A stretch of 64,000 bases of DNA, from the NCBI RefSeq assembly GCF_031769215.1, contig NW_026782105.1, positions 186,001 to 250,000 on the forward strand, written 5' to 3'. Origin of the DNA: Ylistrum balloti (taxonomy: Eukaryota). The position numbers and the translations under genes were made by a program. The notes under the pieces are model-generated. The model ran no database searches. It worked only from the letters and a program-made list of their open reading frames with translations, and was not told the origin of the DNA. This document shows, piece after piece, positions 27,841-48,457 of this stretch; position 1 is the first letter of the stretch, and each line of letters opens with the position of its first letter.

Positions 27841-29625
27841 CTATGTAGCCAAATTGCTGTACCCTGAGCGCCGACGACAGTAGCATGCAATTCCAAACAT
27901 TATCAGTGCGAGACCAGCACCAAGGGCAATGCCACCGGCGAACGATCCGCCGTCAAAGCCGGAAGAAGAAGCGCTCGTTGTCGTTGAGAGTGGTAATTCC
28001 GTTATAGTTACTGGATTTGTTTGTGTCGTTTGTCCGGAAGTTACGGTAGACCCCGTGTAGTTGGCAGAGTGTTCTGTCGTTATCAGTATAGTGGTGTTGT
28101 CTACCGGAAGTGTAGCTGTAGTACCGTTGTCACTGGGCGGAAGTGTGGTGGTTGCGTTATTGATAGGGAGTATGCTCGAACTGTCGGTGGTTATGCTCGT
28201 TATGTTTTCTGTGAATATCAAAGAACAGAATATTTACACTAGGGAACAGTATCCCTTTCTAATACATTTGTATCCTACAGTTATGTTGTGTAGTTGGATA
28301 ATCGTATGAAGCCAACGAGATTCCAACGACAGAGCAGAGTCTCGTCCGAACTTGAGACTCAAATGGCAGAGCAGAGTCTCTTGGGTTTCCGACGATGCAT
28401 TAACGTACAGTTCACTAAATATTCAATGATCAAATACGATACCATTTAATAAAAATGTAATTATAGTTGAGAGGACGGGGACTTGATAATGAAATGTTAC
28501 CGTCATGTATAGTATGACCCTTTCTGTTATGATTAGACTCGTAAATCTATGGATTTGATGTACCATAGAGAGGTGTCCATTTTGAGAGAGTGTTGCTCTA
28601 TTAATGAAATATGAAAATGTATTTAACAACTTCTCATGCCCCTGTGCTATGGTATGTATCGTTATAGCACGGAGCTATCTCAGTCAATCACTAACACACT
28701 AGACCAAGGGTCAGTTCAACTCATAGAGATATAGGTGCAGTTACCACAGGCTTAATCTCTTATACCTGGACAGAATTTAAATACGATATTGAACACCGAT
28801 ATCATCAGGTGTTATTTCTAAATTGGGCGGGGATGAGGCACGGCGACCTTTGATGGATCTTAAATTCTTAGGCAACGTTATCAATCATGCCCGATTTGCA
28901 TGGTCACTTATTTCGAAGTACTTGCGCAATTACTGCGTTAACAGAAAGCAAATTGCTTAAGTTAAATACTTAATTATGTAGTATTTGAAATTTGATAGAC
29001 ATAAAATAGTGAATATGTTTTGTTCTTTACTGAAACGCACGTGATTCTTTTTTCAATGAAACCAGCCATTTGTTACGGGGGAAAATCTTTTTAAAAATGG
29101 GATGAAAACGTCATAAACTTCTAGTCACTTTGACCAAACTTAATCGGCATATATTGTAGCCAAGTTATTGCAGTTAAAAGTAAAACATTCACAGATTAAC
29201 GGGGTATCTGGTCGTTGGAATACAAGGCTCGCTGAGAATAGGAGACTTTGGAGGCTTTGTAAAACTAGGATTATTGTGCCTGGTCCCTAATAACACATAC
29301 AATAATATACCTTAAGGTTTCATTTCGTTCCACAAACAAATATCTGTACTTTTTAGATAATACAATTCAATTGGACTACTTGAATAAACTTTGTAACTCG
29401 ATGAATTTACCTAAGTTACGTGTATATCAAAGTTTAACAGGTACATATATATGTACTAATTGGTGTCAGAAATTATAACTGAAAACATATCAAACTGTTA
29501 TACCGCCTATGTTTCTGCCGACACACAGACTTACCATAACTGGATGTAGTAGATGCTGAGAGAACTGGAGAAACAATGACATTTAAGACAATAACTGCAA
29601 ACGAAAGACGATAATCCATTCTCAT
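27841..29625 (-). CDS. CD164/porimin-family mucin-only type I membrane protein (paralogue A), about 152 aa, 2 exons
   Basis: Exon 29625-29535 (MRMDYRLSFAVIVLNVIVSPVLSASTTSSY, signal peptide, GTAAGT donor, phase 1). Exon 28208-27841 (Thr/Ser-rich with 5 N-x-T sequons, FDGGSFAGGIALGAGLALIMFGIACY TM, tail RRRSGYSNLAT*). Confidence 0.85.
28302..28395. mobile_element. Small degenerate MITE in the paralogue A intron
   Basis: Ends TCGTATGAAGCCAACGAGATTC and GAGTCTCTTGGGTTTCCGACGA are imperfect inverted repeats; internal GAGTCTC/GAGACTC hairpin. Confidence 0.4.
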
Positions 29626-31019
29626 TTCGTCAGGTAACGTCTACAAATAATCACTTCAGTTTAACACTTAAACCGATGATATTTATAAATATTATTCCAG
29701 TGAATGGCCAAGAAAATCACCATCAACGTCATCGAACACTTACAGACCAGAGTATGTATAATCACGTGTGATATAATCACGCCCCTACATTATCAGAGCA
29801 CGCTGGTACGTACATGTATATATCTTATCAACGGTAAATAAGATAAACACATCGTCAATTTTCAGGTCCTGATTCGGATCCTGTGACAGCATCATGGATA
29901 TAACTTATATAGTTTAGTGAAAGGATTCAGTTTTTCTTTTGTATTTTTTTTGTCAGAAAACTATACATGTATGTTAATACTATAATATAAATCTGTGTAT
30001 TTTTTGCGTCAATTGTTGAGTAAATTTCCTGATATATATACCGAACGACCATCGACAGGCGGAAAGCAGCCGAAAGCCGCTTCTTCGTAAGTACATTAAT
30101 TTGTATCAAATGCTTTAAAGATTAAAAAAAGGACCGAAAACGTTATTTGAAGTCAGCGAAATTTGAAACTAAAATTAAAATATAGTTGCAATATATGATG
30201 TTTGTCAAATTTATGATCGTCATTCCTTTCGAGATATCTTAGATTACTTTGATAACGATAACGCCTTCTTTCAGCGATAATTAACCCCCACACCCCCCAC
30301 ATACCCCACACACCCCACCCCACCCCTCCGAATTTTTCCTAAAAAATATTAAGGTGAATTTGAATGACTTAGGCAATGATTCAATGTGAAAGTCTGCTAT
30401 GGATAGTGCAAAAAGCACACTGGTGAATAGTGCATTTCAATACAAACAGGGTTAGATACTTTATATTAGTGAAATAAAATGTGTAAACCGGTGATATATT
30501 ACAGGTTGTCATTACTTGGGATTATATATCAGTTCTTGGCGGATGTCGACGGTGAAGCAGCCGGGTGCCCTTGTGGTACACCAAGTATTATCAGTCTTGT
30601 GCTTTTCACAGGATCTCCATATGAATAATTTGTCCTCATCCCGTCAATTTATTTCAAACTACGATTTTGATAATATGCTGTATTGTCCCTTTTGTTTGTG
30701 ACACTTTACTTTTAGCTATTTAAACTGATCATATGTGGTTATTATAGGAAAACTAACACAGTTTTTTTTACGCAAATGTGTAAATCTACTCATAGAGGAA
30801 GATGGACGAGTGGTTAAAGTATCTCACCATTTTTATAGTCGCCGGGTACTGCCACAGAGCGGTAGTTTCACTACCCAAACCTGGCACGCCGTCCTTAAAT
30901 TAACCTGGCTGTTAGTAAGACGAAAAGCAACACTTATCTAATAAGTCTTATTATATAACAACATTTCCATACGCCGCCCTGTGAGTGTCTTTCTTCTACA
31001 TGCAATATCAGTAATTTGA

Positions 31020-31410
31020 ATTGGTGATACCAATAGTCATTGATGTCTTGAGATATTCATTGATATCATTAAATGCTTATTGAAATCACTGTATTGCATG
31101 AATTGCCGATATCATGAATTCAGTGATATTATAAATCGGGATTTGTAATATCTATAATTCATTTAACGTATTCAAATTAATGATATTGATAATTCAATAA
31201 AAAATATCGAAAATTCGAATTTGTGATTTCAGATTTTGAAGACCTCAAATAGCGTCCAAAGAAGAGCGTATGTATTTATCTTCAAATTGTGATATAATCA
31301 TTAGAATTAGTGGTATCAATAATTCGATTAAGTGATATTATTAGATATTTATTGATATCATTAGATAATTACTGATATCAATTAATCAAACTAGCACTAT
31401 CACAGTTTGT
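31020..31410. repeat. Degenerate GATATC-rich low-complexity tandem array (probable MITE interior); a similar tract lies at about 41560-41790
   Basis: Repeated (T/A)GATAT(C/T)...AAT(T) words at roughly 20-25 bp intervals. Confidence 0.45.
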
Positions 31411-46274: not shown

Positions 46275-46404
46275 NNNNNNNNNNNNNNNNNNNNNNNNNN
46301 NNNNNNNNNNNNNNNNNNNNNNNNNNNNNNNNNNNNNNNNNNNNNNNNNNNNNNNNNNNNNNNNNNNNNNNNNNNNNNNNNNNNNNNNNNNNNNNNNNNN
46401 NNNN
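46275..46404. other. Assembly gap (130 N)
   Basis: Run of n characters. Confidence 0.99.
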
Positions 46405-46775
46405 CTGTCTTTGTTTCTCTCATTCAGTTTACGTAACTATAGAAACAAATGCCATACTATGATCAAGAATCTTTCTGTAATTATTGTCGTATACGAGGTC
46501 ATGAAAGACATGAAGACTGGTTTAATGTGCACGAAAGAACAGGATAGAAGCGGATAACTGACAAGCCATCGAAGTTTTTGTCATGCACATACAGTTGCAT
46601 CGTGTATTCTCCATGGTAAATATATTAACTAATGCAGGTCTGTAGTCAACCAGACTTGCAACAATTTTATTCATCGTCCGAATTGTTGTACACCTAACAA
46701 ATTAAGAATGAATATGTGCTTTTTCCGAGACTGGTGACTGATGACTATGTTGTTAGTAAGATGTTATTATGATTG

Positions 46776-48457
46776 TCATTGTACTGCTGAATAAGGTCTT
46801 CTTCCATTTGCTCTTCTAGCATATAAGTAATATACAAGACCGCTTAGAAGAATGACGCCAGCTCCGAGAGCGATACCACCACCAAATGATGAGCCGCTAA
46901 ATCCACCTTTCGAGGGAGATTGGGTTGGATTTGGTCGTTGTGTTGGTGCTTTTGAGGTGAGGTGTGCTGGTGACGTTATGTGACTTGACATGGTGGTTCC
47001 ATTGCCAGTGGGCATGGTAACAGTTGTCCCATTGATGTCAGGCAGCATTGTCATAGTAGTCATTTCTGAAGTGCCGTTGTGACTTGATGTGGTGCCATTG
47101 TCACTTGATGTCGTCATGCTTCCATTCGCTGTCGTCATGCTTCCATTTGCTGTCGTCATACTTTCGGTAACTGTCGTCATATCTTTGGTTGCTGTCGTCA
47201 TTCCGTTGGTTGGTGTCGTCATATCTTTGGTGGCTGTCGTCATTCCGTTGGTTGGTGTCGTCATATCTTTGGTTGCTGTTACTCCTAAGTGAGATGCAAT
47301 ATAACAAATATATTATCTCAATACTATTGCTATTTTTCTCATTGGAATAACTACCGCTCTGACAATGGGTGTCTCTTGTTACTTTGCTGCTGATGAATTT
47401 GACGAATCTGTTAAGTTTGAGCTGATGCAGTTCAACGAGTAGACGAAATTTCAAGACCTAGTGCCTTTGTCTTGTTAAAAACGTACAGTTTACATTTACT
47501 TTTTACTTGTATTGCGAAGAAAAGCACTCACGATCGTACAAAAGACACACAATCAAACAGCACCTTTTTCATACATTCGTACATTTTGTCAATTTAGGAC
47601 TCGACAGTGATGCCAAGAGCCTAAATTTTGAAATCTATGAGGCGACTGAGACGGTGTTTATTTTCCTTCCAGACATGTTTTGGACTAGACTCTAGTACTA
47701 CTAAAATCTTATGAAAGGTTGAAAACATTAAAATACAGTTGTATTTATTATTGGACTTCAGGAATTGTTTGTGTTTTGTTCAACGAAATTTTAAATGTAC
47801 AGTTAAGTTAATGGTGTGTCTTCAGTTGAATATTTTTCAATAACTAAATGATGAAATTGTCGCAAGTCATTTCTTCTATTTTTCAATAACTTTTGTAATA
47901 TAGCCTGCGCAGAAATCAGCACATCTTATACAATCTAAGCATTTGGCATGTATCATATGCTTTACATACCGCCAGCTGTGGACATTTCTCCTGTTGTCAT
48001 ATTAGCTGTGGTCATGGTTGCGTTTTCTGCGGTGGCTGAGAAATGGAAAACACACATATTTAATTTTCTTTACATAAAAGTACTCTGTATATCAAGATAG
48101 CATAAGATATTTTACATTAAGCATACCTCTGTATGATATGCCATACAATAGAAACAAGCATAATGATATCTCATGGCACCAGCTTTCTACATCAATGCAT
48201 TATTTAACTTAAATAATAGAACAATAATAAATTCCAACTATCGGTAACAGAAAAAAATTATAGGACTTCGTTTTGCGAATATATTAAAGTATTAAGTATT
48301 AAAAATTTAGTGATCATTTGATAGTTCATTGACATACAAATTATAGGAATGATAAAAATTCTTAAAAGATGGAAATCTCACCTGTTGGCGCCCCCAGGGC
48401 ATGTTCAGACAGAATTGTGATCAAAAGAAACACTCTAAGAGATTTAAAACAATTCAT
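46776..48457 (-). CDS. CD164/porimin-family mucin-only type I membrane protein (paralogue B), about 216 aa, 3 exons
   Basis: Exons 48457-48382 (MNCFKSLRVFLLITILSEHALGAPT, signal peptide), 48035-47970 (TAENATMTTANMTTGEMSTAG) and 47284-46776 (MTT heptad repeats, FSGSSFGGGIALGAGVILLSGLVYYLY TM, tail ARRANGRRPYSAVQ*). All GT-AG, phase 1; 651 nt. Confidence 0.87.

What the first reader, a model, noticed from the sequence alone, without database searches (positions are those of the whole stretch)
27841..48457. Candidate immune island: cGLR pair nested between two duplicated cell-surface sialomucins
Seen: gene order CD164(-), mucin paralogue A(-), cGLR1(+), cGLR2(+), mucin paralogue B(-), PPIL6(-). 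Two unrelated families have each expanded within the same ~21 kb. Known: mammalian CD164 is an entry factor for LCMV, Drosophila Visgun (a CD164-family mucin) is a receptor for Photorhabdus Tc toxin, and cGLRs are innate sensors. Inference: this may be a locus pairing pathogen-facing surface or endolysosomal receptors/decoys with cytosolic second-messenger sensors. The co-location could also be chance in a duplication-prone region.
Basis: inference. Interest (0 to 1): 0.78.

Follow-up and report, generated by a model that had tools for sequence, protein, structure and literature searches.

The report
Scallop cGLR pair between CD164-like mucins
Two cGAS-like immune-sensor genes sit between two small CD164-type mucin genes in this scallop genome, and at least two other scallop genera keep the layout. 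Nothing found here shows that sensors and mucins work together, so it is best read as an old inherited neighbourhood.

Summary
The window holds, in order, CD164(-), mucin A(-), cGLR1(+), cGLR2(+), mucin B(-) and a PPIL6-like cyclophilin(-). The finding's ends are exactly mucin A's stop (27841) and mucin B's ATG (48457). The N gap (46275-46404) lies about 370 nt 3' of mucin B's stop. It breaks no reading frame, and both its flanks are colinear with Mizuhopecten.

The two Mab-21 ORFs are intronless and 43% identical. They keep the GS/DxD/D catalytic residues, fold like cGAS/cGLR, and carry a helical C-terminal domain of about 270 aa.

The three mucin genes are the only exons in the 648-Mb genome with the CD164 transmembrane motif. 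Mucins A and B lack the Cys-rich domain.

The whole block is present in Mizuhopecten and most of it in Pecten; Argopecten keeps the cGLR array. dS is about 1 or more and dN/dS is 0.1-0.4, so the block is old and under selection.

Five non-scallop mollusc CD164 loci have no Mab-21 gene within 10 kb. The genome has at least 67 dispersed Mab-21 loci. No shared promoter element was found.

Functional coupling is therefore unsupported but not refuted. Earlier scan notes describe other cGLR clusters of this genome beside unrelated genes.

The parts
319..25097 (-). CD164 (endolyn/MGC-24) gene. Signal-peptide exon 25097-25040; Cys-rich exons near 18.7, 15.4 and 11.0 kb; last exon 513-319 with the TM segment and a C-terminal YHTL.
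   Evidence: The last exon hits Pfam MGC-24 at 58.3 bits (genome scan). Exon 1 and the promoter block 24905-25226 are conserved with Pecten L001 630-956. Cys-rich exons were found by tblastn.
27841..29625 (-). Mucin A: a 2-exon, roughly 152-aa CD164-family paralogue (exons 29625-29535 and 28208-27841). It has a signal peptide, an S/T-rich ectodomain with 5 N-x-S/T sequons, the CD164-type TM motif, and a short tail containing YSNL. It has no Cys-rich domain.
   Evidence: (MGC-24 27.0 bits, just under the 28.5 cut-off). Orthologues: Pecten 158 aa (67%/78% identity per exon) and Mizuhopecten 166 aa. dN/dS 0.29-0.44.
32254..34224 (+). cGLR1: an intronless Mab-21/cGAS-like receptor (656-aa ORF; probable start 32302, 640 aa) with a helical, TPR-like C-terminal domain of about 270 aa.
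   Evidence: Pfam. Invariant G66, S67, D78, D80 and D201. AF2 model pLDDT 88.9. Foldseek top hits are Sp-cGLR1, cGAS and Cv-cGLR1. Orthologues are 72%, 70% and 64% identical in Pecten, Mizuhopecten and Argopecten. dN/dS 0.09-0.16.
36233..38251 (+). cGLR2: an intronless paralogue of cGLR1 (672-aa ORF) with the same architecture.
   Evidence: 43% identity to cGLR1; PDB sequence hits to cGLR1, MB21D2 and cGAS. cGLR1 is its only close paralogue in the genome; all others are at most 34% identical. Orthologues are 58%, 61% and 53% identical. dN/dS 0.18-0.21.
46275..46404 (.). Assembly gap (130 N) in the 3' flank or UTR of mucin B. It is not in any coding frame.
   Evidence: The flanks are colinear with Mizuhopecten L008.
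46776..48457 (-). Mucin B: a 3-exon, roughly 216-aa CD164-family paralogue (exons 48457-48382, 48035-47970, 47284-46776). It has a signal peptide, a 7-aa-periodic T-rich mucin repeat, 8 N-x-S/T sequons, the CD164-type TM motif, and a tail containing YSAV. It has no Cys-rich domain.
   Evidence: (21/42-nt repeat). The Mizuhopecten orthologue is an annotated 232-aa gene, 73% identical in the last exon, with the same tail end. dN/dS 0.20. The Pfam MGC-24 hit is only E 0.085.
54523..60580 (-). PPIL6-like cyclophilin gene of at least 7 exons, with a non-cyclophilin N-terminal part.
   Evidence: Exon frames. Pro_isomerase hits on two exons. The PPIL6 assignment rests on my recollection of the human protein and was not tool-verified.

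Best explanation
This is an inherited gene neighbourhood of scallops (Pectinidae). It was built by two independent local duplication histories and kept since by descent.

(1) Mucin history. CD164 sits beside a PPIL6-like cyclophilin gene here, and CD164 and PPIL6 share one 77-kb block in dog. CD164 was duplicated in tandem into two short type-I mucins. Each kept the signal peptide, the O/N-glycosylated stalk, the family's juxtamembrane/TM motif and a YxxPhi-type tail, but not the Cys-rich domain.

(2) cGLR history. One member of the very large, dispersed, intronless bivalve cGLR-TPR family came to lie between the two mucins. It then duplicated in tandem into cGLR1 and cGLR2. Copy number still changes: Argopecten has a third copy and Mizuhopecten has a fragment.

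Likely function. All four genes are intact and under purifying selection. The cGLRs most likely act as ligand-activated nucleotidyltransferases that make a cyclic-(oligo)nucleotide signal for STING, whose exons are present elsewhere in the genome. The mucins most likely act as glycosylated surface or endolysosomal membrane proteins.

Shown versus inferred. Shown: anatomy, family assignment, catalytic residues, fold, conservation, selection and genome-wide distribution. Inferred: enzymatic activity, mucin localisation, the order of the duplications, and that the adjacency itself has no function.
For: Anatomy and family assignment.

CD164 family in this genome. The F-x-G-x-S-F-x-G-G-I motif occurs 5 times in the genome. 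Three are the exons of this window and two are chance-like.

cGLR family in this genome.
- The Mab-21_C scan gives 90 hits on 60 contigs, or 67 loci, of which 14 are tandem clusters.
- cGLR1 and cGLR2 are each other's only close paralogues.

Conservation in scallops.
- Mizuhopecten carries CD164, mucin A, cGLR1, a cGLR fragment, cGLR2 and mucin B on one scaffold.
- Pecten carries CD164 exon 1, mucin A, cGLR1 and cGLR2, followed by a DIRS-like transposon.
- Argopecten carries cGLR1, cGLR2 and a third copy.

Age and selection: dS is about 1.0-2.7 and dN/dS is 0.09-0.44.

No recurrence elsewhere.

Promoters. Each gene has only its own short proximal conserved block; there is no shared element and no ISRE or kB site.

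Background.
- STING_LBD exons are present on three other contigs.
- The bivalve cGLR radiation and cGLR-TPR fusions are already described (bioRxiv 10.1101/2023.02.22.529553).
- CD164 and PPIL6 lie in one 77-kb block in dog (PMC9957375).
Against: Points that leave co-regulation open:
- The gene order has held although dS is saturated.
- Mucin A and cGLR1 stay head to head, only 1.2-2.7 kb apart, in three genera. That arrangement is compatible with a bidirectional or co-regulated promoter.
- CD164-family proteins are used by viruses and toxins in other animals.
- Motif scans would miss unknown mollusc elements or promoters upstream of unannotated 5' exons.

Limits of the comparisons:
- No expression, chromatin or population data could be consulted.
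- Only 10 kb of flank could be read in other species.
- Oysters and mussels were not examined.
Confidence: 0.78

Rival explanations
1. It is a functional immune island. The mucins are pathogen-facing receptors or decoys at the surface or endolysosome. They are co-regulated with, or functionally feed, the two cytosolic cGLR sensors, and selection keeps the four genes together.
For: The block is conserved across scallop genera despite saturated dS. The head-to-head mucin A/cGLR1 pair, 1.2-2.7 kb apart, is conserved. All four genes are under purifying selection. CD164 is a virus entry factor in mammals (PMC8915965, PMC9239079).
Against: - The pairing does not recur at five other mollusc CD164 loci or at the nearest non-scallop cGLR locus.
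- At least 66 other Mab-21 loci in this genome lie on other contigs; by earlier scan notes, unchecked here, some of them sit beside unrelated genes.
- No shared conserved non-coding block and no ISRE or kB-like site was found in the four promoters.
- In Argopecten no mucin exon lies within 10 kb upstream of cGLR1.
- Scallop microsynteny may be conservative in general, so conserved order may be weak evidence: earlier scan notes, unchecked here, report other conserved cGLR neighbourhoods in this genome.
Confidence: 0.08
2. It is a recent, species-specific accident in a duplication-prone region: a young insertion or young duplicates with no long-term maintenance.
For: Copy number varies within the locus between genera: a third copy in Argopecten, a fragment in Mizuhopecten and a transposon in Pecten. 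Satellites flank the block.
Against: - cGLR1 and cGLR2 are only 43% identical.
- Both have 1:1 orthologues in three other genera with dS of about 1 or more.
- Mucins A and B also have orthologues.
Confidence: 0.03
3. It is an assembly artefact: the gap at 46275-46404 joins unrelated pieces, so mucin B and PPIL6 are not really next to the cGLR pair.
For: There is a gap of estimated length between cGLR2 and mucin B.
Against: The same order (cGLR2, conserved non-coding block, mucin B last exon) and similar spacing (520 vs 598 nt) occur in M. yessoensis on an independently assembled scaffold.
Confidence: 0.02
4. The Mab-21 genes are not nucleotide-signalling sensors. They could be non-enzymatic or differently acting Mab-21 proteins, like MAB21L1/2, in which case the label 'immune' would not apply to the locus at all.
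For: No member of this cGLR-TPR subfamily was found biochemically characterised. MAB21L1 and MB21D2 are among the structural and sequence hits. No ISRE or kB sites lie upstream.
Against: The G-S, D-x-D and third Asp are invariant across 11 subfamily members and nearly invariant across 40. The best structural matches are active cGLRs and cGAS. STING genes are present. Active mollusc cGLRs are known.
Confidence: 0.09

Closest known systems
Animal cGAS-like receptors (cGLRs), in particular the bivalve radiation and the cGLR-TPR fusion architecture described by Li et al. 2023 (bioRxiv 10.1101/2023.02.22.529553)
   Same: Same Mab-21 NTase core plus Mab-21_C. The GS/DxD/D active site is intact. The predicted fold is cGAS-like. 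The C-terminal helical domain is TPR-like. The genes are intronless members of a very large, dispersed bivalve family with tandem clusters.
   Different: This particular two-gene subfamily has full-length relatives only in scallops, unionids and a venerid in my search. Its ligand and product are unknown. Its genomic address between CD164-type genes is specific to scallops as far as tested.
CD164 / endolyn (Pfam MGC-24) family, including Cys-poor relatives such as porimin/TMEM123 (family assignment from memory) and Drosophila Visgun
   Same: A type-I membrane mucin with a signal peptide and an S/T-rich glycosylated stalk. It has the family's F-x-G-x-S-F-x-G-G-I juxtamembrane/TM motif and a short tail with a Y-x-x-hydrophobic motif. 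Like CD164 exon 1, the signal-peptide exons are phase 1.
   Different: Mucins A and B lack the Cys-rich domain that separates the two mucin domains of CD164. Their Tyr motifs (YSNL, YSAV) are not the terminal YHTL. Both score below the Pfam gathering threshold (27.0 and 13.6 vs 28.5 bits).
CD164-PPIL6 neighbourhood of mammals (human 6q21 from memory; dog chr12 block in PMC9957375)
   Same: CD164 and a PPIL6-type cyclophilin lie in one small block. Here both are on the same strand.
   Different: In scallops about 29 kb of lineage-specific genes (two mucin paralogues and two cGLRs) plus a 2.2-kb satellite lie between them. In Physella the CD164-like gene is flanked by a tRNA synthetase and RMI1 instead.

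Membership tests
cGLR (cGAS-like receptor) | Mab-21 nucleotidyltransferase core plus Mab-21_C helical lobe (cGAS fold) | tested here: met
   Both ORFs hit Pfam PF03281 and PF20266 above the cut-off. The AF2 model has pLDDT 88.9, and its Foldseek top hits are Sp-cGLR1 8gjy, mouse and human cGAS, and Cv-cGLR1 8gjw, with TM by target 0.64-0.72.
cGLR (cGAS-like receptor) | Catalytic G-S ... [DE]-x-[DE] ... [DE] residues | tested here: met
   G66, S67, D78, D80 and D201 (ORF1 numbering) are invariant in 11 subfamily members and at least 90% conserved in 40 family members. The third Asp aligns with the corresponding strand of 8gjy.
cGLR (cGAS-like receptor) | Ligand-dependent synthesis of a nucleotide second messenger | not testable with these tools
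   This needs recombinant protein and nucleic-acid or other ligands.
cGLR (cGAS-like receptor) | A STING-type receptor encoded in the same genome | tested here: met
   STING_LBD (PF15009) exons score above the cut-off on contigs C357, C642 and C685.
CD164 / MGC-24 sialomucin family (mucins A and B) | Conserved juxtamembrane/TM motif and type-I mucin layout | tested here: met
   The motif is shared by CD164, mucin A and mucin B. It occurs nowhere else in the genome except at two chance-like sites. Signal peptides, an S+T fraction of 0.34 and 5 or 8 N-x-S/T sequons are present.
CD164 / MGC-24 sialomucin family (mucins A and B) | Pfam MGC-24 gathering score | tested here: not met
   Mucin A scores 27.0 bits and mucin B 13.6 bits against a 28.5-bit cut-off. 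CD164's last exon scores 58.3 bits.
CD164 / MGC-24 sialomucin family (mucins A and B) | Cys-rich domain between two mucin domains | tested here: not met
   No Cys-rich exon was found between or beside the exons of A or B. CD164 itself has three.
CD164 / MGC-24 sialomucin family (mucins A and B) | C-terminal YHTL lysosomal-targeting motif | tested here: not met
   CD164 ends in YHTL. Mucin A has YSNL followed by two residues, and mucin B has YSAV followed by one residue. These are YxxPhi-like but not the canonical terminal motif.
Functionally coupled immune gene cluster | The same pairing recurs in independent lineages or at other loci | tested here: not met
   Five non-scallop CD164 loci and the Sinanodonta cGLR locus lack the partner within 10 kb. 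Other Mab-21 loci of the genome are on contigs without CD164-type exons. The limit is 10-kb flanks, and oysters and mussels were not sampled.
Functionally coupled immune gene cluster | Shared regulatory elements or co-expression | tested here: inconclusive
   Only gene-proximal short blocks are conserved. There are no ISRE or kB-like sites in the four upstream regions. Expression data were not available.
PPIL6 | Cyclophilin-like domain preceded by a PPIL6-specific N-terminal region | tested here: inconclusive
   Two exons hit Pro_isomerase. The N-terminal exon has no Pfam hit and only weak thioredoxin-fold-like atlas leads. Orthology rests on my recollection of the human sequence.

The most novel reading that the evidence does not exclude
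The conserved head-to-head mucin A/cGLR1 pair, and perhaps the whole four-gene block, is a co-regulated scallop defence module. A glycosylated endolysosomal or surface mucin that pathogens bind would be expressed together with dedicated cGLR-TPR sensors, and selection would keep the genes adjacent.
Probability: 0.07. Interest if true: 0.65.

Novelty: new member of a known kind. Interest (0 to 1): 0.3.

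Why it matters
If the adjacency were functional, it would be a rare animal case of a surface or endolysosomal pathogen-contact protein genetically linked to cytosolic cyclic-nucleotide sensors. It would also give a handle on what activates one of the many orphan bivalve cGLRs.

As the evidence stands, its value is more modest:
- It documents a scallop-specific triplication of CD164 into Cys-less mucins.
- It documents a conserved, selected cGLR-TPR pair that is a clean target for biochemistry.
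- It shows lineage-specific genes lying between CD164 and a PPIL6-like gene, two genes that also share a small block in dog.
- It shows that apparent 'immune islands' around bivalve cGLRs must be judged against a background of at least 67 dispersed loci.

Tried and rejected
- A word search with the mucin B last exon found nothing, not even the 73%-identical Mizuhopecten orthologue later found by context. That blank is therefore uninformative.
- The look-up of the Sinanodonta CD164 protein's locus failed. Only its contig length and locus tag suggest that it shares a chromosome with the cGLR pair, about 260 gene models away.
- A Pfam scan of the 907-aa Haliotis neighbour failed on an internal stop. 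tblastn shows it is not Mab-21 or PPIL6.
- The atlas look-up for the PPIL6 N-terminal exon gave only sub-threshold thioredoxin-fold leads.
- I considered and rejected a two-gene [mucin + cGLR] unit duplicating as a block. The order (-)(+)(+)(-) fits neither a tandem nor an inverted copy of such a unit.
- I considered and rejected retrotransposon carriage of the cGLRs. No transposon ORFs flank them here, and the DIRS-like element is Pecten-specific.
- I made no spliced (joined-exon) protein for search or folding. Exons were handled one by one by reference.
- I sent no complex-prediction job, because no binding claim is made.

Full report
**What is there**

The window is G000:C248:186001-250000 of a 648-Mb bivalve assembly. 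The closest relatives of its proteins are from Pecten maximus, Argopecten irradians and Mizuhopecten yessoensis, so the animal is a scallop. An earlier scan note names it Ylistrum balloti. I did not check that name beyond confirming that the species is a pectinid.

- Both hit Pfam Mab-21 and Mab-21_C above the gathering score.
- They are 43% identical over their whole length.

**The mucin genes**

Two minus-strand terminal exons flank the ORF pair, at 27841-28208 and 46776-47284. Each encodes an S/T-rich stretch, one transmembrane segment and a short tail.

Reading the minus strand gives complete small genes with canonical GT/AG junctions, all in phase 1:
- Mucin A has exons 29625-29535 and 28208-27841 (about 152 aa).
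- Mucin B has exons 48457-48382, 48035-47970 and 47284-46776 (about 216 aa).

The finding's start and end are therefore exactly mucin A's stop and mucin B's ATG.

**The flanking genes**
- CD164 proper lies further left, from exon 1 at 25097-25040 to a last exon at 513-319. The last exon scores 58 bits on MGC-24 and ends in YHTL.
- A cyclophilin gene with PPIL6-like exons lies at about 60580-54523 on the minus strand. The PPIL6 label rests on my memory of the human protein.

**The gap**

The 130 N at 46275-46404 lie about 370 nt downstream of mucin B's stop codon on the minus strand. No reading frame crosses them.

A conserved non-coding block at 46207-46256, left of the gap, and the mucin B exon, right of it, match M. 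yessoensis in the same order and at similar spacing, 520 against 598 nt. The join is therefore supported.

**The cGLR genes**
- In an alignment of the two ORFs with nine relatives, the G-S, D-x-D and third Asp of the cGAS/cGLR active site are invariant. They are at least 90% conserved among 40 family members.
- An AlphaFold model of cGLR1 (pLDDT 88.9) has a cGAS-like core. Its best Foldseek matches are coral Sp-cGLR1, cGAS and oyster Cv-cGLR1.
- The core is followed by an all-helical domain of about 270 aa that gives weak TPR hits.
- STING ligand-binding-domain exons exist on three other contigs.
- Bivalve cGLR radiations of more than 200 genes in some species, and cGLR-TPR fusions, are already published.

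These are therefore new members of a known kind. Activity and ligand are inferred, not shown.

**The mucins as CD164 paralogues**
- All three minus-strand genes share the juxtamembrane/TM motif F-x-G-x-S-F-x-G-G-I.
- A back-translated pattern finds the motif five times in the whole genome. Three are these exons. Two are chance-like, one containing a stop, and the reversed-pattern control gives one match.
- The whole CD164 family of this genome is therefore this tandem trio.
- Mucins A and B lack the Cys-rich domain. They fall below the Pfam cut-off at 27.0 and 13.6 bits. They carry YSNL/YSAV-type rather than terminal YHTL motifs.
- They are best described as Cys-less CD164-family mucins.

**Is the co-location more than chance?**

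The Mab-21_C profile finds 90 matches on 60 contigs. Most lie in open frames of 650-750 aa. They group into at least 67 loci, of which 14 are tandem clusters.

A pre-named 25-35 kb interval would catch one of these loci with probability of about 0.3%. The interval was chosen after seeing it, however. With 67 or more loci, some are expected to sit beside a gene that can be given an immune reading. Earlier scan notes, unchecked by me, describe other cGLR clusters of this genome beside SLC5 transporters and inside a UNG intron.

cGLR1 and cGLR2 are each other's only close paralogues; all others are at most 34% identical. The pair therefore arose by local tandem duplication. The order (-)(+)(+)(-) cannot be produced by copying a mucin+cGLR unit, so the two families expanded independently.

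| Species | What was found |
|---|---|
| Mizuhopecten yessoensis | One scaffold carries CD164 (287 aa), mucin A (166 aa), cGLR1 (644 aa, about 70% identical), a cGLR fragment, cGLR2 (651 aa, 61%) and mucin B (232 aa; last exon 73% identical, same tail end) |
| Pecten maximus | CD164 exon 1, mucin A (158 aa), cGLR1 (72%) and cGLR2 (58%), then a DIRS-like retrotransposon at the edge of the readable flank |
| Argopecten irradians | cGLR1, cGLR2 and a third copy; no mucin exon within 10 kb upstream |

Synonymous divergence between genera is saturated (dS 1.0-2.7). dN/dS is 0.09-0.21 for the cGLRs, 0.20-0.44 for the mucins and 0.02 for the CD164 tail. The block is old and all its genes are maintained.

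Outside scallops the pairing is not seen.
- CD164 loci of Potamilus, Aplysia, Haliotis, Mercenaria and Physella have no Mab-21, no second CD164-type exon and no PPIL6 exon within 10 kb.
- The nearest non-scallop relatives of the pair are an independently duplicated pair in Sinanodonta. They have no CD164-type exon within 10 kb.
- The limits are 10-kb flanks and no oyster or mussel locus.

**Regulation**

Mucin A and cGLR1 are head to head, 1.2-2.7 kb apart, in three genera. Only short blocks next to each start codon are conserved, with nothing shared in between. ISRE-like and kB-like patterns do not occur upstream of any of the four genes. This is weak negative evidence only.

**Verdict**

The components are correctly named. 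The 'immune island' reading is neither needed nor supported by what could be tested, and it is not excluded.

The most likely account is an ancient pectinid neighbourhood. It arose from a tandem triplication of CD164 and from the arrival and duplication of one member of a huge dispersed cGLR family. Both sit between CD164 and a PPIL6-like gene, two genes that also share a 77-kb block in dog (PMC9957375; human adjacency from memory).

I referred no step. I made no spliced protein, and I did not fetch or compare any human sequence.

Noticed in passing
window 8799-18881 (-), CD164 introns and exons: CD164 carries three Cys-rich exons (about 10946-11035, 15322-15594 and 18633-18881), where one module would be expected. 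Another first-stage note (s1-240740) covers this.
   Followed up: partly
window 4655-5653 (+): Two adjacent ORFs resemble the HTH and DDE parts of a Tc1/mariner transposase. They lie inside a CD164 intron and look like a decayed element.
   Followed up: no
window 6576-7804, 49579-51771 and 61939-63203: There are three satellite arrays: a 61-bp unit x21, a 31-bp unit x73 with strong GC skew, and a 45-bp unit x28. The second fills much of the space between mucin B and the PPIL6-like gene.
   Followed up: no
L008 8046-8369 (+), Mizuhopecten yessoensis: A 108-aa fragment, 57% identical to the N-terminus of cGLR2, lies between the cGLR1 and cGLR2 orthologues. It looks like a partial extra duplicate. 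Argopecten (L002, from 20410) instead has a third, longer copy.
   Followed up: partly
L004 20069-23013 (-), Pecten maximus: A DIRS-like retroelement (a 315-aa tyrosine-recombinase ORF plus a 591-aa RT ORF) is inserted downstream of the cGLR2 orthologue. It is annotated there as a 414-aa gene.
   Followed up: no
Sinanodonta woodiana chromosome CM100984.1 (L003; P0009, P0011, P0135): The closest non-scallop relatives of the pair (locus tags 028183 and 028184) and the CD164 orthologue (027921) appear to lie on the same 189-Mb chromosome, about 260 gene models apart. This is either a possible remnant of older linkage or chance.
   Followed up: no
window 25409-25419 and 25898-25908 (+): Two ISRE-like GAAANNGAAAS matches lie 0.3-0.8 kb upstream of the CD164 start. 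The window total is 6, against 2 expected by chance.
   Followed up: no
L011, Physella acuta: The CD164-like gene there is flanked by a class-Ib tRNA synthetase and RMI1, not by PPIL6. The CD164-PPIL6 neighbourhood is therefore not universal in molluscs, or that gene is a paralogue.
   Followed up: no
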